Below are positions 751 to 51,104 of a DNA stretch of 64,000 bases, piece after piece; positions within the stretch are counted from its first letter, which is position 1; every line of letters starts with the position of its first letter. The notes under the pieces were generated by a model that worked only from the letters and a program-made list of their open reading frames with translations, ran no database searches and had not been told where the DNA came from. This DNA is from Vitrella brassicaformis CCMP3155. Lineage: Eukaryota; Protista; Chromerida. Location: contig CDMY01000242.1 in the NCBI GenBank assembly GCA_001179505.1, forward strand, positions 62,001 to 126,000, in the 5' to 3' direction. A program made the position numbers and the translations under genes.

Positions 751-3700
751 ATGATGAGCGCTCCTGACCACTACGAGCATCCTCGCGAACTCTCGAGTGC
801 TCTTCTCCTCTCTCTCCCCACCTTTGTAGCGCCCCCAAATGCCTTTCGTCGCTACGCCGATCAGCTACAAGTGGAACTTCTCGACAGAGTCAGGCTCCTG
901 GACAGCATCAAGGTGGCAGTGCCAAGTGCATGCGATAGAACGAATTCACTTGATCGGCAACCCATGAAAATGTCTCCTGATTTGTCGATTGTCGTGCAGG
1001 TTGCGGACTTGGAGCGTGGTCACTTTCACGTGACTCTGGCCGACACACAGGGGCCGCTGACTCTGGCCATCACCACCGACACGCACACACTCTTGACTCT
1101 CTCGCTCTGGGCGGGCGGCACTACTCTTCTGGGCCTCTCGTCGCCATTTGGGGCGGCCGGTGCTGCAATGGGTCATTCGAGGCCGTTTCGCTTCAAGTTG
1201 GCAGATCATGTGAAGGATGGATGGCTGTGCGTGCGGGAAGGGCAGCACGACGTTGCAGTCACGGACGAATCACTCAAGGCAGACGCAAGTGGTGAGTGAG
1301 TGAGTGGGAGACATTCGGCCACGCAGCCTGTTCATTCACTGGTGTCTCTTGTTAGCAGCAGCAGCCCCTGGCGGCGACAACGATGGCTTTCGCATTCACA
1401 TGCTAATGGCGGTGTTGCCGTCTTCGAAGGTATGTCTCTTTGTGTGGCTATCCATTGACCAAGGTATATGTGCGCTTGTGGATACAGCTGTCAAAGCACA
1501 GGATGAGATATTGCATCGAGGAGTTCAAGAACATATCCATTCAGGTGCGGCACACATGCATATGTACGTACGATCTGATGCGTGATATCGACTTTTGTCT
1601 GTCCGATTGGTATTCAGGCGCGTACCAGTGACCTAATCAAGGGTCTCACCCAGGTGAGACACTCATATCTGTTCACTCAATAGGCAGACATGTCTGTGTT
1701 CTGTCTCCTTGAATCATTCAGCCCATCTTTGACTCCCTCTCCCCTGTCCGCACCGGTGCCACCGGGCGCACATACAGCTCCCTCAGCATCAACAGCTTTC
1801 TGCCGCCGTCCTTTCCGCCTTCTCGAGAAGCATCACCCACATCTCGAAGTGAAACTATTTCCATGCTGTCAGTACCATCTGTGCCCGAGGCGCCTGCCGC
1901 TGAGGAGGAGGAGGAGGAGGAGGAGGAGGAGGAGAAGGAGGAGACGGCCGTAGACGCATCGCCTTACAGCCATGTGGTCGCTGTTGGTGGGCCGCGGACG
2001 GAGGCCAGCCCCAGGACAACACACACGAAGCCTTCGGTCGATATCGATGTTGCTAGAGGGATGGCTGAAATGCCCTCGCCGACAACGAAGGGTTTCATCC
2101 AGCGAGGCAAGATTGAGACACCCATCGAGCTGCCATCCTACGGCAAACAATACAGCAGAAAAGTCGATCATCCGAAGACGGATACGCGCTTGGCCGAGCT
2201 GTATACGCCACCAAGGCCTGCGGCTGAGATACCGACAGCTGGCATCTCGCCGCCACCGTCACCTCCCCCGAAGAAAGGGATCGGTCTGTCCTATGCCAAA
2301 ACGAGCAAGCCAAAGGGACCAAGCTTAGCGGCCGCCAAGACAGCAGAGATCAGCACTACTCGAACTTCTCGACACAAGCAGCCTATCGACGAGAGAAGAT
2401 CGACCCTCCCGAAGATGAGTAAAAGCAACCGCATGTCCGGGTCTTCGACAAGACACGGTTCCTCTTCGCGGCCACCCTCCCCTGAGGCCCCTCCAGCTAG
2501 AGGAGGTGAGGCTATCTCGACAGCCCCAGGCAGCCAGACGAGACGATCAGGTGAACGCCTGCACGAGACAGCAGCACCAATTGCTGAGGTCGAGAACCCC
2601 CTTGTCGCGTACTGCATTAGCCGGACATCTCGCGGCAGGTCCAGCTCGGCTCTCTTGTCTACCGATAATAAGCGAATGGCGGCGAGAACCGCCGACCTCC
2701 CACAATCGCCCTCGCCTCTGTCGTCGACTGATGGGAAGCAAATGGCCACGACAAGTCAGCAGCTCTATGATGGCAGCCATGGCAGTGGGAATGTGTCCCT
2801 CCCTAAGCGGCAGCGTGACGCATACGACGAGCAAAAGGACGGCAGCTGTAGCATGGCAGATCGACTGGAAGAGGCGGCCTTTGATGAACAGGAGCAGCTG
2901 AGAAGGCAGCTGGCACAGCTTCAACAGCAGCTGACCTCAGTCGAACACCGTGCACAGAAGACGGAAAACCAATGTGAAGCCCTCCGCTACGGCCTTGTCC
3001 GCCAGGCAAAGCACTCAGCCCTCCAACACGACAACGATCGCACACAACTGACGTTGTTGGAGAGCCAGGCGGGCGAAGTGCGGTTGAATGCCGCCATGTG
3101 GCAGAGAGAGGCCGAGAGGCTGCGGGGGGTAGAGAGAAGGCAAGAGACACTCGAGCAGGAGCTCAGCGGACTGAAAAGAGAGTATGTCGATGTGCAGAAA
3201 CGGCTGGAAGAGGTGAGACATCCACCCATTACTTGCATGATTGATTGGCACTGTGTCTCTTTCTGTATGTGGCAGAGCTTTGAGGAGAATGCTCGCCTGA
3301 GGGAGGCCAACAGCCGCCTGTATGAGATCAACGACGAGCTCTGTCTTATGATGCAAGAGATGCCGAGAGACAGACCGCAATCGCGGCCACCAGAGCGTAC
3401 GCATCATCCAAAAAGGGCGAGAAGCCGGTCCCCGGCGGCAAGCGATGGGAGCCCTCGTGCACGATCCGTCGGCCCGCTCCCTTCACACTCATCTTTCATT
3501 CCCGTAAGCTCGTCTACTCGTGGAGTGACGGATCGCATCGACTGGCTGCTGCACCAGCACCTGAACGACCACCCGCACCTCATGGTGAGATCAGAGAAAA
3601 ATACCATCCTCCATCATTGCCTCATGGATGCTGTTGATGTCTCGCAGAATTGCTTCCGTCGACTGGATGAGGGAGTCTACTCGTACGCGAACCTTATCAC

Positions 3701-4175
3701 ATGAGTGGCTCACGTCTCTATCCGTGTGTGTCTCCTTTTCCTTGTTTGCAGTTATTGTGGTAAGGCGGTCACAGCGCGCATCGCCAACGGACAGCTCGTC
3801 TTCCGTGTCGGCGGAGGGTACCTCTCGTTCGACAGCTATATCACAGCACACACCCCTCACCCCGCATACCTATGCCCCTTCCTCCGACTTCACCCACAGC
3901 CCCGCGTAACGCCCCGTCTCAAACGGATCGACCATCCTGTGACCCCGACCTGTGACCCACTTGATCTGGATTGGGTGCATGAGCGGCCTCCGGATCAGAT
4001 ATGCATGGGTACCAGGTGGACGGAGAGCTTGCGATCGCGAGTGGTTGGCGTGGATGAGTCGCGGCAGCATCTCAGAGTGCTGAGAACGCACCATCAGTCA
4101 GTGGGTAACCTACGTTTTGGGCCACCCCCACTGAGGGAGACGGAGAAGTCTGATCAACACGAGGAAGAGACGTAG
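751..4175 (+). CDS. GAS2/GAR-domain (microtubule-binding) protein with acidic and low-complexity region and coiled coil
   Basis: ORFs 682-1299, 1863-3704 and 3705-4175 join in frame via GT-AG introns (e.g. donor 1292; 3213-3275; 3585-3647; 3683-3751). The spliced C-terminus IDWLLHQHLNDHPHLMNCFRRLDEGVYSYCGKAVTARIANGQLVFRVGGGYLSFDSYI carries the GAR signature RVGGG[WY]. Confidence 0.8.
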
Positions 4176-4880
4176 AAGAGGTGGAAAGCGAGGCGCTGTA
4201 TATATGTTTTGGTTACTAGAATATGAGAGAGTAAGTAAGGCAATGCATCTTTTCTAGGACGGTAGGGTTATGTCTGTGGGTCGTGTTTGGAGGCATTGGC
4301 TCTTGGGAGTGCATGTCGGTACTGATGCGAAAAGAAAGGAAGCTTGTCTCTCTCCTCCGACCACTCTCTCTTTGAAAAGATGCTTTTTGGGACAGTACCC
4401 GTAGTTGAGCACTCATCATAGGGTCAACGTCAATATGCCTGGCCCACTTTGGCCTTCGAAGGGGCCCTCGTTCGTGGAATAGGCGCAAAGGTGGATTGCG
4501 TCCCCGAAATAATGAGGAGACTCTCGCGCTACGCACTGCAGCGGTGCCTTGCAGAGGTGCTTGTCATAGAGTTTTTTTTCGCAGCCGGCCGCCGCCACTC
4601 CCTCTCTGTGTCTCTGTCCAGCTCACCGCTGCGCCGATCCGCCGTCGATATGTCTACGATGCGCTCACGCTGTGAAGCTGCCGGATACTGTACCAGCCGG
4701 CCATCGATCGAACTTCAGCAATCCTCCCATCTGTGCGCACAAAATACCTGCAACTCACATACACATACAGAGAGCGACAACAAAGCCAGCAGTGTGTTGG
4801 CCTCGCGGCTGAGAAAGGTGTGCTGGTGAAGCGTCGTCTCACTTGCCTCTCCCGCAGTCTATGTGTGCTGTCAGATCGGT

Positions 4881-6677
4881 TCAGCCGCTCCCCACCTGCA
4901 CACAGAACACATACAGCAGTGCTATCCACAGCCAGCCAGCCACATGTGCCCTCCGTTCCCCTCGCCCACCCACCTGCCACACTTCCATCTCATCGCTCGT
5001 GAAGTTGTTCGACCGCGCCAGTCTGCCGTTGCCGTGCTTATTGATCTCCCCTCTGTATCCATCGTGCAACAGATCTTTCTCGACCCACTGCTGGCATCTG
5101 CTGAGGTCGGCGGCCGGATCAGGACGACCATGGCCCAGCCAAAGGTAGCCGCGGCCGATGCAGACATTGGCGGTCGGCATGCCCTCGGTGTCCTTCACCA
5201 CCCCCTGTGTGCCGGCCACATTCACCTTCTGGTCCTCTGCGAGCAGCTCGATCTTGGTCGGCGCGTCATACGCACCCGACAGCGAAAAGAAGAAGACGGG
5301 CGCCTTGTACCAGTTGGCCTGCGTGGGGTCGTCTGGGGGGGTGATCTCGCCGTCGATGAAGGCGCCGAAGCGGTGCGTGTCGCCATCTCGGAGGGCGAAG
5401 AGCAGGCCGCTCTTGCCCTCGACGCACTCGAGCATCTTGGGGAACGCATACGTGTCGCGACTGCCCCTAAAAGGATGACACACCACAGACGACAGATGCA
5501 TGCCTTTTGTGGTCTGCCCTGCCTGTCTTGTGCCAGCATTCGGTCTCACTTGTACAGCAGCGATGGCGCCACGGCGATCTTCTTGTCGGTCATCTTCATC
5601 ACCGCCAGCCACTCGTCGGCCGTCCTGATCACTGCGGACGCCCCCGCCGCCTCACCGACAGGCGGCACCGTGTCGAGGCCGTACATGCCCAGCTCGACGG
5701 CAAAGATGGCCTTCTCGTGCGGCGCCACCACCGGCGGATGGACGAACCGGCCGGGCGGCATGACGACAGTCAGGCGGCGGGCAAAGTCGACGATGAGCTT
5801 CCTCATCAGACACGCTCAGCGTCATCACCTGGGTGTCCTCATCGCTGCTGTCCCGATTGACGAACGGCCGCATGGCCACCAGGAAGGCCTCCATGGCCTT
5901 CTTCTGCTTGCGAAGCCCCTCGAGCAGGCCCTCGTAGCGCCGCATGCACTGCTCCATCTGCCGAAAGCCTCTCTTTGCCCCGCCCTCCCCGCCACCATTT
6001 GCCGCCGTGCCAGTTGACTGTGGCTGATTCCCAATCTCGATGGCACCGCCCAGCGTCTGCATGAACAGCGAGTGGTACTCGGCATAAGAGGGATCGTCGG
6101 CCTCCGGTGAGTGCAGGCTGATCTCGTCCAAGTGAGGGCTCTCGAGCAGCGCCAGCTGGTCACGCAGCCATTTGAAGTAGGGCGGGTGCGCCTCGAGGAA
6201 TGGCAGGTCGTTGGTGTCCTTGGGCAGGGCGTCGATGAAGTGCAGCAGCAGGGTGGAGAGGTACGTCCGCTTCATCTTGGGATGGAGAAGTGCTGACAGG
6301 GGAATCGACATGACAGTGCCGCCCACATTGAGCCGAATGCGGTCCTCTGTCTGCAGCGGCTGCAGCGTGCCGCCATTTGCGACGAACAAGTGCTTGATCT
6401 GCTCCTCCAGCCGCTCCATCTCGCCCATCGCCTCGGTTGTCGCCGTCTTGGCCATCTCCCTGAGGTCGTCCATGCAGCCCGCAGCCTGCTTCAGCACCAG
6501 ATCTCCCTCCTCACGACCGCTTGTGAGGCTGTGCAGCTGCGACTCAAGTGGGGCGGCCGAGTCAAACTCATCGACAGGTGACGCAGATCCCAGGGCAGAT
6601 CCGCTTGGACGATCGTCGCGCCTTCGCTTCCTCGAGCCTCCAGAGGCTGACAGCATCGTGGCTAGCCGCTGAAACAT
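4881..6677 (-). pseudogene. BTB-TLDc protein, left-arm copy, frameshifted by an 83-nt deletion at 5797/5798
   Basis: Close paralog of 14577-16582 (RLNVGGTV..LPKDTN.LPFLEAHPPYF; GSRDTYAFPKMLECV TLDc). Reads DEE-AHRRL where the paralog reads DEE-VSVLRR..LQ-LIVDFARR. Confidence 0.7.
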
Positions 6678-47413: not shown

Positions 47414-48289
47414 GGTGAACTTAAACGCGCCGAAGGAGAAGGTCACCGGCGGGAGCGGTTCACCAAAGGATCGGAGGTCGAGAGAAACAGAACAGCCGTT
47501 GAAAAAGATGTCGATATCTGACGTGTACAGAGAGATAGACAGGGCGCTTGACCTGCTCAACCATATCATCGACCGCAATGGACATCACAACCAAGAAAGA
47601 TGGGTACTAAGCAACGGAGAAAACATACAGGCAAAGCAGCCGACCACTCACCGCCTCCCTTTCGCTGCCTGCTGGCTGATACTGCTGCAGTAACCCACCG
47701 TTCCATCGACGCATTTTACGTCCCTTCCCCTCCCAGGCCGCAGCCCCTTCTGCTGCCCAACCACGTGCACGACACACAGGGCCGCAACGTCGGTGACATC
47801 GGCTGCAATGTGGAGCACCTGAACCATCTCCTGTGGCAGCTGAGAGAGGGGGGAGGGGAGAGGGCTGAGCACAAGTCAGCTGTGTGGTCCCCCTCTTATC
47901 ATGGGAGGAGGCCGGTTGCAAGCGTGGAGATGGGTGTGGGTGGGGCTGCAAGTGCTTTGCAGTCTTATGTGGATGGGTATCGTGAGCAGCTGGCTGTGCT
48001 GGAGGAGTGGCATCGGCCACAGGAGGGCAGCAGCAGGGAGGGAGAAGACAGGGCGGGCGAGGAAAACAAGAGGGACACTCAGTGACCTGTCAGTGGCCTT
48101 GTGTATGTGATTTGTTCATTGTGTCTCTCTGGTCAGTAGCCATGGATGTAATTGACCTATGTACCTATGAATGTATGTATGTATGTCTGCATTAAGCAAT
48201 CATGCATATCATGACCTATGCATCCATCCATCCATCCATCCATATGACTCTACACGGACCAGTCGCTCATATCTACCCATCTACCCACA

Positions 48290-50897
48290 TTACTGCTTTG
48301 TCTTGACGTGTCTCTTGGCCCACGTGATCACGTGCTCGAAGAACTGGACTTGCGCAGAAGTCCCGCAAGGAGGCACCATCTTGATGCCGTTCTTGTCCAT
48401 CAGGGCGTGAGGGTCCTGGCAGAATTCCCTCCCCAAGTTGATGATGTTGGTGTCTTTGTTGTTTTTGCTCTTTGCGTGTGCGTTGATGGCCCCGTAGCAC
48501 GATATCCGGGGGTTGTTGATGAGGTTCCCCAGCTCTTCGTCTTTCATGGCGTTTTTCACCGCCTGCGTTGCACCGGTCATGTGTATGTCATGACACACAC
48601 CATGAGACAGACAAGTACATGCATGCACCATCCATTTTCACGGGTGGCTCACTTACTTCCCGCCGAGTTCCATCGCGTCCTCGCCTCTCCTGTATGTTCT
48701 GCAGGGGCACTCAGCGGACTGCGAAATAGGGCCTCCGGTGTGTGGCGCGCCAGGGAACAGGGCGTAAGAAAGGTCAATCTGCCCAGACAGATGTGCATGC
48801 AGGTATCAATCAATACGTTGTGTGTGTACGGATGCGCCCATCTTTGTGTCTCCTACGAGGGCGAGATCGCCGGCCTTTGGAGGATAGAAGCCCACCAGCT
48901 GCAACGGTCAATATGGGCGGACACGAGTGCCTCTGCTGCTCACTGAGAGACACGCCCCGGCCCACCGGCCCACCTGTTCTCCGCTTGGAGTCTTCAGCTT
49001 GACTGCATATCTGTTTGGGTCGTTCGCCGGCCCTCTCGCCCCCTTGCGAAAAAACAGCACGTTGCCGTCCTGACATGAATGCATAGACATACAGACACCC
49101 CGTCTCTGCCCTGTTCTGTGTCGTAGTCGTGTGAGTGTGCCTCTCGTACATGCATGTCGCAGTGGTGGAAGTTGACACTCTGCAGCTGCAGCCCGGCCTG
49201 AGCGTATGCCATCGCCAGATATGCACCCTGGGGAATCGTGTCTCCACTCTGAATCGAATGGAATCGACGCATGGCATTAATGCGACAATGCGTATGCGTG
49301 ATTAGGCCGGTCGCTCACATCTGAGATGGTGAGAGGGTTGTTGGCTTCGGCTGATGGCATCCCGCTTGTCAGTATACGGTATCTTATGGCATCCAGCTTC
49401 TCAAGCTCAGGAAATCTGACAAACACCAATAGCAGACACACACAGTACAGCAACATCGCACCTCGTCTCTTCTTCCTCACTTGTGAGCAGCTCCCCCTTG
49501 CCGCTCCGTCGGATCATATACACTCTTGGAACCCGTGGGAAGTTGCCTGAGGCATAGGCTGCGCCAATGGATTTGATGGCTGCGGGCCTGCCGGCGTCGG
49601 TGTCCGTGAGGATCTCCCAGAGCTTCTGGTAGTCTGCCATTCAGAGAAGGACCGTAGGGATGTGCTCGGTGTTGACATACGTGGGTTTAGACATATATGC
49701 ATCTGTGCGTGCACACTTCTCTTCTCGTCGTTGAGCGCCTTTCTCATTTGGGCGATCTTGTTTTTCCCTGTTGCGAGGTCGTTCTCGGACAGCTCTGCTC
49801 GCAACAAATGAGAGAGGCACAACACATGGGCGTACGATTGTGTGCTTGCTGTGTGCCGGCTGCGTGCCTACGAGTGGTCATCGATCGGTGGGCGTCTGAA
49901 TAGCTCATGGTGTAGGTGGTTCCTACATAATGCAGACAGATGCATTGCATGCACAGCGATCTCTCCAATTTGATTCGTTTATGACCTTTGGTCTTATTTC
50001 GGTACTCTCGAGACACACACAGCAGAGACACAATCAGAGAGAGGGAGACACAGCACCTCTGGGTTCTCCGTCCGTGTGTATGCGTGTGCTCACCTTTGTT
50101 CTCCCTTTTGAAGGTTGCATTGTCGCCCAGCACACCCTTGAGAGCCACCTCGACATCCTGCGCCACAACACCTCCCACAAGCGAGTACTTCTCCATCAGC
50201 GTATAGCCCGGTGTCCCTGCAGCAACAAAACCGCACACCCATTCCAGAAGGAGGAAACACGCGACGGAACTTCTCGTGTCTACGCACCATGCTTGAGGGT
50301 GCAGAAGAGGACGAAGCCAGAGGCGCCGGACAAGAACTGGATGTTGTGCCTTATCTTGTCGATGACGAGGGATATGGTGGATATTCTGTCTTTCTCCGCC
50401 TTCTTCCTCAGGGTGACCGTCATACTGGTCGCCAGAGCGGCACGATGTCTCTTCCAAAAGGGGTCGAGCGTCTTGGTGTCCGTGGCCATGTCTGCATGTG
50501 GAGAGCGAGAAGGGGAGAGAGACATGATGCGTGTGGGAGGCACACTGTCAGGCAGTCGGTGACTTACCCTGAATGTGACAAAGGACAAATTCCATCCTGT
50601 GAGGATGATCATCATATACAGCAACAAGGTGAGACATGACGCGAGCCCCAATCGTCTCTCTGTTTACCCGCAGATATCCTTGATGAATTCATCAAAGTGC
50701 TCGTCTGGGTGGAAGTACAGCTCCTCCTTTTTTTCGCCACTCGTCACACCAGCCCGGGCGGCCGAATGGTTCGCAGCACGCATCGACCACGAAGACCGGG
50801 TGAGGCGTAAGCTCATCTTTCTTCTCCGCAATGCCATGGCTGGAGAGAGGAGGGCGGCGGACAGGAAGAGAAGGAACTTCAAGACGAGGTGCGGCAT
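48290..50897 (-). CDS. Signal-peptide-bearing atypical protein-kinase-like protein
   Basis: Spliced motifs in kinase order: Gly loop SGASGFV (~50311-50331), VALK (50138-50149), catalytic FHHCDMH|DGNVLF (49150-49167 / 49061-49069), IDLSY (48767-48778). N-terminal MPHLVLKFLLFLSAALLSPAMA. Some internal junctions are uncertain. Confidence 0.72.
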
Positions 50898-51104
50898 TGA
50901 GGTGGTGGGATGACAGGAGATGGTCGCCTATGATTTTGATGGGTCAACTACCACAATGTGGGAGAGACGGGAAGGCGGGTCTTGGGGGCGTGGGGGGCGT
51001 CTGGCTCGCCGTCTTAGGGGAGTTCCCCATCCCGAAGATTATGTAATGAGCCCTCTTCTGTCCTCCCACGAGTAATGAGTTCGCCACCAGCTGGCTCTAC
51101 GGCA

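What the first reader, a model, noticed from the sequence alone, without database searches (positions are those of the whole stretch)
48290..50897. Secreted or plastid-targeted atypical kinase with an HCDMHDGN catalytic loop
Seen: signal peptide plus an R/S-rich segment; the catalytic Lys, Asp, Asn and Mg-binding Asp are all present, but HRD becomes HCD and DFG becomes DLS. There are long inserts, and a hairpin-like stretch (RYAVKLKTPSGEQRHSCPPIL) between subdomains VIb and VII. Established: HxDLHxxN loops with such inserts typify haspin-like and other atypical kinases; apicomplexans export divergent kinases (ROPK, FIKK) as effectors. Inference: a novel secretory-pathway kinase family in a free-living or symbiotic relative.
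Basis: partly seen in the sequence, partly recalled or inferred. Interest (0 to 1): 0.72.

Follow-up and report, generated by a model that had tools for sequence, protein, structure and literature searches.

The report
Frame-broken copy of orphan kinase-like gene
This gene of the alga Vitrella brassicaformis belongs to a small, unannotated, probably kinase-like family with signal-peptide-like starts, but its real messenger RNA puts the three parts of the protein in three different reading frames, so this copy most likely no longer makes the full protein.

Summary
Spliced RNA contigs from three datasets fix a 14-exon model in which they are not in one frame. The N-terminal part (signal peptide, R/S-rich stretch, G-rich loop) stops in exon 9. 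The HHCDMH|DGN...IDLSY part is one base out of frame. The conserved C-terminal 90 residues are one base out again. The official annotation splits the locus into two ORFs, of 279 and 135 aa.

An intact 561-aa paralogue on another contig carries all three parts in one frame, so the ancestor was co-linear and this copy is broken. Two more distant paralogues exist, giving at least four members. All are in Vitrella. A search of 1.84 billion proteins with the catalytic piece found no relative elsewhere.

Pfam, NCBIfam and PDB sequence searches find nothing, and haspin membership is not met. Three weak or moderate lines support a kinase-like fold: language-model and ESM-model neighbours, a controlled profile-profile alignment in register, and conserved ordered motifs. 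Both AlphaFold runs failed.

Verdict: most likely a transcribed, recently disabled member of a new lineage-specific kinase-like family. Moderate interest.

The parts
50668..50978 (-). Exon 1. 5'UTR of 81 nt without any ATG. First ATG at 50897. Signal-peptide-like segment 50832-50897. R/S/A-rich stretch with no acidic residue 50736-50831.
   Evidence: RNA contig joints, translation, coordinates and composition
50568..50596 (-). Exon 2 (29 nt)
50288..50491 (-). Exon 3. Ends with the G-rich loop SGASGFV (50310-50330), which is conserved as G-x-x-G-x-V-x-F in all four family members.
50094..50216 (-). Exon 4. Holds the candidate beta3 lysine in YTLMEK (50188-50205).
49986..50006 (-). Exon 5, a 21-nt mini-exon
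49872..49922 (-). Exon 6 (51 nt)
49717..49794 (-). Exon 7
49481..49633 (-). Exon 8 (YQKLWEILTD...GNFPRVPRVYMI...GELLT), the last exon read in the ATG frame as family sequence
49384..49482 (-). Frame break 1. The junction 49481|49415 leaves the mRNA one base short of the family frame. The ATG frame runs on as NFLSLRSWMP and stops at 49384-49386. The joined mRNA reads A_AAT_TTC (49482, 49481, 49415-49411), a canonical -1 slippery heptamer in the zero frame.
   Evidence: no stable structure downstream
49319..49415 (-). Exon 9 (FPELEKLD... in the second frame)
49150..49248 (-). Exon 10, ending in HHCDMH (49150-49167)
48974..49069 (-). Exon 11, starting with DGN (49061-49069), then VLFFRKG...RYAVKLKTPSGEQ
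48909..48932 (-).
48857..48898 (-). Exon 12 (LVGFYPPKAGDLAL)
48657..48778 (-). Exon 13. IDLSY (48764-48778) is the DFG-type position. CPC lies at 48701-48709.
48556..48664 (-). Frame break 2. The junction 48657|48562 again leaves the mRNA one base short. The second frame reads GGKR and stops at TGA 48556-48558.
48290..48562 (-). Coding-like part of exon 14 in the third frame (AVKNAMK...KTKQ*). GC3 is 0.80. It is homologous to residues 132-208 of the paralogue fragment P0003.
47690..48289 (-). 3'UTR. The independent JGI transcript ends in the (GGAT)n run at about 48212-48250. The rest of the Logan contig may belong to the next transcript.

Best explanation
The locus is one transcribed 14-exon gene of Vitrella brassicaformis. 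It is a member of a small family of at least four genes, all in Vitrella. The family proteins start with a signal-peptide-like segment, followed in this subfamily by an R/S-rich, transit-peptide-like stretch. They keep eight cysteines and carry kinase-like motifs in canonical order: a G-x-x-G-x-V loop, VAVAIK in the paralogue, a hinge-like hhhE, HHCDMHxGN, a roughly 40-residue insert, and hhIDΦSΦ. In this copy the mature mRNA is one base short at two exon junctions. Ribosomes starting at the first AUG therefore make at most a 306-residue product: leader plus N-lobe-like half plus a 10-residue out-of-frame tail. The catalytic-loop part and the conserved C-terminal part sit in two other frames. 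Most likely this is a recently disabled but still transcribed copy, because the downstream frames are still open and still carry the family's conserved residues. The intact paralogue CEM36244.1 and its MMETSP transcript represent the working form. Shown here: the exon structure, the two frame breaks, and the co-linear paralogue. Inferred: the kinase-like fold, entry into the secretory or plastid route, and loss of function.
For: - Exon structure and both breaks: spliced contigs of runs from two studies, and an independent JGI/MMETSP transcript identical over 1478 nt. All 13 introns are GT..AG, and three frames result.
- All three pieces look coding in their own frame: GC3 is 0.73, 0.65 and 0.80.
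- The official annotation gives two ORFs, CEL95998.1 (279 aa) and CEL95997.1 (135 aa).
- HMMER against 1.84e9 proteins finds only the query's own ORF and P0003 (E 1.4e-6). P0003 and CEM36244.1 (561 aa) lie on contig C884.
- The catalytic piece and the C-terminal piece align co-linearly to one frame of P0003.
- The paralogue needs no frame change at either break position.
- 8 of the 9 cysteines are conserved, spread over all three pieces.
- Kinase-like support: the language-model neighbours that carry a Pfam family are protein-kinase-clan clusters (0.91-0.92, about 170 shared features). All structural neighbours of the ESM model that carry a family are in the same clan.
- hhalign of the family against 11 Vitrella protein kinases scores 26.7 with 2 sequences and 30.2 with 4. 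Reversed controls score 15.3 and 18.3, and 45 column shuffles reach at most 22.7. G-loop and catalytic loop align in register in both runs; VAIK and the hinge align in register in the 2-sequence run.
- Two more distant paralogues keep the same blocks.
Against: - No Pfam, NCBIfam or PDB sequence match for any piece or for the paralogues.
- Both AlphaFold runs failed (pLDDT about 36), so the fold is not shown.
- The hhalign P-values are only 0.013 and 0.005.
- Against 'pseudogene': both downstream frames are still stop-free over 153 and 90 codons and keep every family-conserved residue. Both breaks sit at exon junctions. The first junction creates a textbook -1 slippery heptamer in the right frame.
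- Contigs drop rare isoforms, so a minor in-frame mRNA cannot be excluded.
Confidence: 0.62

Rival explanations
1. A full-length protein of about 540 residues is still made. The first break would be bypassed by -1 ribosomal frameshifting at the junction-made A_AAU_UUC heptamer. The second would be bypassed by another recoding event or by a minor splice isoform. The gene would then be a working leader-bearing kinase-like enzyme.
For: - A canonical X_XXY_YYZ heptamer sits exactly in the zero frame at the junction, and its -1 frame gives K-F-P-E-L-E-K, the family frame.
- The downstream frames are open, have coding-type GC3, and keep conserved Cys and motif residues.
- The transcript was assembled in three datasets despite its early stop.
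Against: - No stable RNA structure lies after the heptamer (z +0.5).
- The second break (GGG AAG CGG TGA) has no slippery site, and I found no canonical alternative splice site there.
- The paralogue needs no shift at either place, so nothing is conserved.
- A heptamer in a window of 10-100 codons is expected by chance in about 2-20% of cases (my own estimate).
- The only frame-restoring alternative donor at break 1 would leave a 46-nt intron, against 63-94 nt for the 13 observed introns.
Confidence: 0.08
2. The truncated 306-residue product (leader plus N-lobe-like half) is itself the functional protein, and the downstream parts are a decaying remnant.
For: - It is the only ORF reachable from the first AUG, and it is what the annotation records, from M27.
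- Exons 1-8 show the clearest coding signature: GC3 0.73 and no stops.
Against: - Half a kinase-like domain without the catalytic loop has no evident activity.
- Five exon junctions lie downstream of its stop, the classic signal for nonsense-mediated decay.
- The downstream pieces show no decay yet.
Confidence: 0.15
3. The family is not kinase-like at all, and the motifs are chance resemblances in an orphan cysteine-rich secreted protein. For example, HHxDMHxG also resembles the USP His box.
For: - No HMM in Pfam, NCBIfam or PDB reaches significance.
- The best PDB profile hit is the USP30 His box 'VVHHGDMHSGHF', E 0.013.
- The Asn of HxDxHxGN is Gln in the two distant paralogues.
- AlphaFold gives no fold.
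Against: - The motifs occur in canonical order and are among the few blocks invariant across four paralogues at about 25-40% identity.
- hhalign against protein kinases beats all 47 controls, with G-loop and catalytic loop in register in both runs and VAIK and hinge in register in the 2-sequence run.
- The language-model and ESM-structure neighbours that carry a Pfam family are almost all of the protein-kinase clan.
- There is no USP Cys box, and GN/GQ stands where USPs have GH.
Confidence: 0.2

Closest known systems
Eukaryotic protein kinases (Pfam PF00069, clan CL0016)
   Same: Order and spacing of G-rich loop, VAIK-type strand (in the paralogue), hinge hhhE, H-x-D-x-x-x-x-N loop and hhD-Φ-x motif. 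The profile-profile alignment is in register.
   Different: No Pfam hit. HCD stands for HRD and D(F/L)S for DFG. There are inserts of about 35 aa (G-loop to VAIK) and about 40 aa (catalytic loop to DFG position), a signal-peptide-like start, and eight conserved cysteines.
Haspin (PF12330)
   Same: An H-x-D-x-H-x-G-N catalytic loop, an insert before a DFG-less metal-binding Asp (haspin DYT, here DLS/DFS). The haspin side rests on my own knowledge of its motifs.
   Different: The haspin HMM does not hit this locus or any piece. Haspin is nuclear, without a signal peptide or a conserved cysteine set.
APH/choline-kinase-type and ABC1/UbiB atypical kinases (PF01636, PF03109)
   Same: An HxDxHxGN-type loop followed by hhIDΦ. 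They appear among the structural and language-model neighbours of the paralogue.
   Different: No HMM match. In those families the catalytic loop and the Asp are about 15 residues apart, here about 45.
Secretory-pathway kinases (FAM20, VLK/PKDCC, FAM69/DIPK; apicomplexan ROPK, WNG, FIKK)
   Same: A kinase-like domain behind a signal peptide, and a cysteine-rich make-up as in FAM69 and FAM20 (my own knowledge).
   Different: No sequence relation was found in any search. This is a topological analogy only.
Kinase-like orphan clusters of giant viruses (Nucleocytoviricota) in the ESM Atlas
   Same: They are the nearest language-model neighbours of the paralogue (0.92, about 170 of 256 features). 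Some members carry ABC1, Pkinase or Pox_ser-thr_kin.
   Different: There is no alignment or E-value. The Vitrella genes have 11-13 introns and host-like composition. This is a lead only.
Transcribed unitary pseudogenes
   Same: Spliced and expressed, with frame disruptions and an intact paralogue elsewhere.
   Different: No in-frame stops or other decay in the displaced frames. Both disruptions coincide with exon junctions.

Membership tests
Protein kinase-like superfamily (clan CL0016) | Significant match to a clan HMM (Pkinase, APH, ABC1, RIO, Haspin and others) | tested here: not met
   Pfam at E<=10 finds none for the three spliced pieces, P0004, or the subfamily-B ORFs. NCBIfam finds none.
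Protein kinase-like superfamily (clan CL0016) | Ordered motifs: G-rich loop, beta3 Lys, catalytic Asp with Asn five residues on, metal-binding Asp | tested here: met
   This copy has SGASGFV, (YTLMEK), HHCDMHDGN and IDLSY. The paralogue has TGANGVV, VAVAIK, HHCDMHSGN and IDFSY. The Lys is ambiguous in this copy, and the Asn is Gln in subfamily B.
Protein kinase-like superfamily (clan CL0016) | Profile-profile similarity to bona fide kinases above controls | tested here: met
   hhalign scores 26.7 and 30.2 (P 0.013 and 0.0046), against reversed controls of 15.3 and 18.3 and 45 shuffles reaching at most 22.7. The margin is weak in absolute terms.
Protein kinase-like superfamily (clan CL0016) | Two-lobed kinase fold | tested here: inconclusive
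   AlphaFold2 on P0004 and on P0003 with 3 further rows gave pLDDT 36.5 and 36.3. The ESM Atlas model of P0004 (pLDDT 0.47) has, among neighbours with a Pfam family, only kinase-clan ones, TM 0.32-0.39.
Haspin (PF12330) | Match to the Haspin_kinase HMM | tested here: not met
   A six-frame search of the whole genome gives no hit at this locus. No Pfam hit on the spliced pieces or the paralogue.
Ubiquitin-specific protease (USP) His box | Cys box plus His box with GHY | tested here: not met
   Only a 40-residue His-box-like match to USP30, E 0.013. The sequence has GN/GQ instead of GH, and no Cys-box match in any search.
Transcribed pseudogene / disabled paralogue | Reading frame of the ancestral protein interrupted in the mature mRNA | tested here: met
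   Two one-base deficits at junctions 49481|49415 and 48657|48562 in three RNA datasets. The ancestral co-linearity is shown by P0003 and P0004.
Transcribed pseudogene / disabled paralogue | Relaxed constraint (stops, loss of conserved residues) downstream of the break | tested here: not met
   No stops in 153 + 90 codons. GC3 is 0.65 and 0.80. All conserved Cys and motifs are kept. This points to a recent event or to rescue.
Programmed -1 ribosomal frameshift | Slippery X_XXY_YYZ heptamer in the zero frame | tested here: met
   A_AAT_TTC at break 1. Nothing comparable at break 2.
Programmed -1 ribosomal frameshift | Stimulatory downstream structure and conservation in relatives | tested here: not met
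   The 100 nt downstream fold no better than shuffles, z +0.5. The paralogue is in frame there.
Bipartite plastid leader (signal peptide + transit peptide) | N-terminal hydrophobic signal peptide, then a basic, hydroxylated, acid-poor stretch | tested here: inconclusive
   The composition fits in this copy and in the C884 paralogue: residues 23-60 hold 9-10 R+K and 0-3 D+E, and the -3/-1 positions are small with Leu at +1 if cleavage follows AMA or VQA. SignalP and ASAFind were not available. Subfamily B copies have the hydrophobic start but not clearly the transit part.

The most novel reading that the evidence does not exclude
The two frame breaks are not damage but are bypassed during translation. 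The first would use a -1 shift at a slippery heptamer that exists only after splicing, the second an unknown event. One mRNA would then give a short N-lobe-only protein and, at low rate, a full cysteine-rich, leader-bearing kinase-like enzyme of a family confined to chromerid algae.
Probability: 0.06. Interest if true: 0.8.

Novelty: new variant of a known kind. Interest (0 to 1): 0.4.

Why it matters
If the kinase-like fold holds, Vitrella carries a private family of signal-peptide-bearing, cysteine-rich atypical kinases. That is the kind of raw material from which apicomplexan parasites built their secreted kinase arsenals. The family is invisible to Pfam and is mis-annotated: this locus is split into two 'genes', and the paralogue's model lacks its catalytic loop. 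The window copy itself is a clean case of a gene caught just after, or in the act of, losing its frame, with every conserved residue still in place. It also warns that motif-by-motif reading of exons can assemble a protein that the cell does not make.

Tried and rejected
- Exon-by-exon Pfam and PDB searches gave nothing.
- Pfam, NCBIfam and PDB on the spliced pieces, the paralogue and the subfamily-B ORFs gave nothing usable.
- A PDB profile search gave only a USP30 His-box look-alike. I rejected it because there is no Cys box and GN stands for GH.
- Word-index protein searches with the 306-aa ORF, P0004 and the 280-aa subfamily-B ORF returned only the annotated ORF of this locus, or nothing.
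- An Atlas search with the 90-aa C-terminal piece was uninformative.
- AlphaFold2 on P0004 alone and on P0003 with a 4-row alignment failed both times (pLDDT about 36). No fold search was run, because low-confidence models give meaningless matches.
- A 13-row fragment alignment (A4) was misaligned and was not used.
- I looked for the paralogue's transcript to settle its odd junction. Two metagenome-contig scans and two exact look-ups found nothing.
- The -1 frameshift idea has a heptamer but no downstream structure, no second site and no conservation.
- Alternative splicing as rescue: the only frame-restoring donor at break 1 leaves a 46-nt intron. I found no canonical site for break 2, and no such joint appears in any contig.
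- Literature searches for Vitrella frameshifting or a kinome found nothing on this family.
- Neighbouring ORFs gave no Pfam hit.
The spliced pieces were searched by reference to fetched transcript loci. A joined version with X at each break was used only inside local alignment scripts.
Full report
**What is at the coordinates.**
The region 48290-50897 lies in a GC-rich (about 55-57%), intron-bearing eukaryotic sequence. Earlier notes of this scan name the genome as Vitrella brassicaformis. I confirmed this: the annotated protein of the locus is 'unnamed protein product [Vitrella brassicaformis CCMP3155]'. They are an ATG at 50897 followed by MPHLVLKFLLFLSAALLSPAMA and an R/S-rich stretch, SGASGFV...NFHHCDMH, DGNVLFF..., IDLSY..., and a final ORF ending at 48290.

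**The real gene model.**
The run search found six runs that hold the stretch. Laying the contigs of four of them showed that two runs, from two studies, hold intron-less contigs. One contig of 2299 nt spans 50978 to 47690 with 13 joints, all GT..AG on the minus strand. An exact look-up of an 85-aa ORF in the last exon fetched that contig as locus L008. It also fetched an independent transcriptome contig, L009 (JGI 3300017297; the same ORFs are on record from MMETSP Transcript_30396). L009 is identical to L008 over 1478 nt, across all the junctions it covers.

The 14 exons are:
- 50668-50978
- 50568-50596
- 50288-50491
- 50094-50216
- 49986-50006
- 49872-49922
- 49717-49794
- 49481-49633
- 49319-49415
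- 49150-49248
- 48974-49069
- 48857-48898
- 48657-48778
- 47690-48562

HHCDMH|DGN is indeed joined by a real intron.

**The motifs are not co-linear.**
Translating the spliced mRNA gives three frames.
- The first AUG has no upstream ATG in the 81-nt leader. It opens a frame that runs through exons 1-8 and then reads NFLSLRSWMP* in exon 9, giving 306 aa.
- FPELEKLD...HHCDMHDGN...IDLSY...CPC...GGKR* lies in a second frame (153 codons).
- AVKNAMK...KTKQ* lies in a third (90 codons).

At each of the junctions 49481|49415 and 48657|48562 the mRNA is one base short of the frame that continues the protein. Each piece has a coding signature in its own frame only: GC3 is 0.73, 0.65 and 0.80. The official annotation reflects this by calling two separate genes, CEL95998.1 (279 aa, from M27) and CEL95997.1 (135 aa, MPSAEANN...GGKR). 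The DNA contigs agree with the window without differences, so this is not an assembly error.

**Relatives.**
Pfam, NCBIfam and PDB sequence searches find nothing for the exons or for the spliced pieces given by reference to L008. HMMER with the 153-aa catalytic piece against 1.84 billion representative proteins returned only its own ORF and P0003 (E 1.4e-6, 41% identity). P0003 is an MMETSP transcript ORF of Vitrella. It clusters with CEM36244.1 (P0004, 561 aa), encoded on contig C884:2156-5015.

The catalytic piece aligns to P0003 residues 2-89 and the C-terminal piece to residues 132-208, in one frame. The ancestral protein was therefore co-linear, and the window copy is the deviant one. The two proteins are about 30% identical over 477 aligned positions. 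Eight of the window copy's nine cysteines align with cysteines of the paralogue, and they are spread over all three frame pieces.

A family profile searched on the whole genome found two more, distant members on contigs C253 and C224. They share these blocks:
- G-x-F-G-x-V-V-F
- (L/M)W(E/D)
- (G/R)(D/S)FP-x-IP-x-x-Y (GDFP in one copy, RSFP in the other)
- (L/M)P...G-W (ILPQGW in one copy, MP...EEGW in the other)
- QHCDLHxxQ
- I(F/Y)DWSFS
- APC

No relative outside Vitrella turned up in the big search or in three word searches.

**Is it kinase-like?**
No curated HMM says so, and the haspin model in particular does not hit the locus. Three lines speak for a protein-kinase-like fold.
1. The conserved blocks are the canonical ones in canonical order. 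The paralogue even has TGANGVV ... VAVAIK ... YLIIE ... HHCDMHSGN ... ALIDFSY.
2. For the paralogue, the ESM Atlas neighbours by language-model features are orphan clusters, mostly of giant viruses. Those that carry a Pfam family carry ABC1, Pkinase, PK_Tyr_Ser-Thr or Pox_ser-thr_kin (0.91-0.92, about 170 shared features). Nine of the ten listed structural neighbours of the Atlas model carry a Pfam family, always of the same clan (APH, Pkinase, ABC1, Kdo, alpha-kinase); the tenth is an unnamed giant-virus cluster. TM is 0.32-0.39. The tool counts these as one source.
3. A local hhalign of the family against 11 Vitrella protein-kinase exon ORFs (fetched with PF00069) scores 26.7 with two family rows and 30.2 with four. 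Reversed controls score 15.3 and 18.3, and 45 column shuffles reach at most 22.7. G-loop and catalytic loop are aligned in register in both runs; VAIK and the hinge are aligned in register in the two-row run.

Against this, P is only 0.013 and 0.005. The Asn of the catalytic loop is Gln in the two distant members. A PDB profile search puts a USP30 His-box look-alike first (E 0.013). Both AlphaFold runs failed (pLDDT 36.5 and 36.3). I put 'kinase-like fold' at about 0.8 and 'haspin family' as not met.

**Targeting.**
This copy and the C884 paralogue both start with a hydrophobic segment. Small residues sit at -3/-1 of a plausible cleavage site, and Leu follows. Next come 30-50 residues rich in R, S and A that are almost free of acidic residues. 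That is the make-up of a bipartite plastid leader in algae with complex plastids (my own knowledge). The distant members also start with hydrophobic segments. With eight conserved cysteines, entry into the secretory route is plausible. Plastid versus secretion cannot be decided here, because SignalP and ASAFind were not available.

**What state is this copy in?**
The dominant mRNA cannot give the full protein. I looked for rescue.
- At break 1 the spliced sequence reads ACA AAT TTC. This is a canonical A_AAU_UUC -1 slippery heptamer in the zero frame, and its -1 frame is exactly the family frame. However, the next 100 nt fold no better than shuffles (z +0.5), and the paralogue needs no shift there.
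- At break 2 (GGG AAG CGG TGA) there is no slippery site, and I found no canonical alternative splice site.
- The one alternative donor that would mend break 1 leaves a 46-nt intron, where the 13 observed introns measure 63-94 nt. No contig shows such a joint.

The stop of the first ORF is followed by five exon junctions, which is the usual mark of a nonsense-mediated-decay target. Yet the displaced frames have no stops and keep all conserved residues. The disruption is therefore recent, or it is somehow tolerated.

My ranking is:
- recently disabled, still transcribed paralogue: about 0.6
- truncated N-terminal product is the functional one: about 0.15
- full-length protein through recoding or a rare isoform: about 0.08

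Independently of these, about 0.2 that the family is not kinase-like at all.

Spliced pieces were searched by reference to the fetched transcript loci. A joined version with X at both breaks was used only in local alignments. The read tools were capped at one call each, so rare isoforms and the paralogue's RNA could not be examined.

**Verdict.**
It is wrong for this copy as a working enzyme, and 'haspin-like' is at most an analogy.

Noticed in passing
L017 (G000:C884) about 3102-3378, minus strand: The annotated paralogue CEM36244.1 lacks the nine residues VGVHHCDMH, which the MMETSP transcript ORF P0003 contains. The genome reads CAC G GTGAGT...CTGCAG TCC, so the transcript's CAC|TCC junction would need a GG..AG intron or a one-base difference between genome and transcript. 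The annotators avoided the problem with an upstream GT donor, which deletes the catalytic loop.
   Followed up: partly
L017 (G000:C884), introns after exons ending at + coordinates 4077 and 2663: Two introns of the paralogue appear to start with GC rather than GT (GC-AG introns), inferred from exact protein-to-genome mapping.
   Followed up: no
L040 (G000:C253:122000-130000) 3039-5443 minus; L041 (G000:C224:87500-95500) 2544-4965 plus: Two more distant family members have QHCDLHxxQ (Gln at the Asn position) and I(F/Y)DWSFS. One has a 280-aa single-exon C-terminal half. The word search returned no annotated protein for them.
   Followed up: partly
window 49923-50093: Introns 4 (87 nt) and 5 (63 nt) are multiples of three and stop-free in frame. 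Exons 4-6 and these introns therefore form one 237-aa genomic ORF (49744-50457), and retaining either intron would keep the frame. Exons 5 and 6 (21 and 51 nt) encode a low-complexity insert that is absent from the paralogue.
   Followed up: no
window 50978-51018: The 5' end of this transcript (50978) and the start of the nearest contigs on the other side of the gap (51013-51018, whose joint shows a plus-strand GT..AG intron) lie only about 35-40 bp apart. This suggests a shared bidirectional promoter.
   Followed up: no
window 48212-48250: A (GGAT)n microsatellite sits in the 3'UTR. The independent JGI transcript ends inside it, and the read tool skipped it as a repeat.
   Followed up: no
window 47690-48130: The Logan transcript contig runs on about 500 nt past the likely 3' end of this gene. 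A loose end at 47690 suggests a splice site, so the contig may merge this mRNA with the neighbouring transcript.
   Followed up: no
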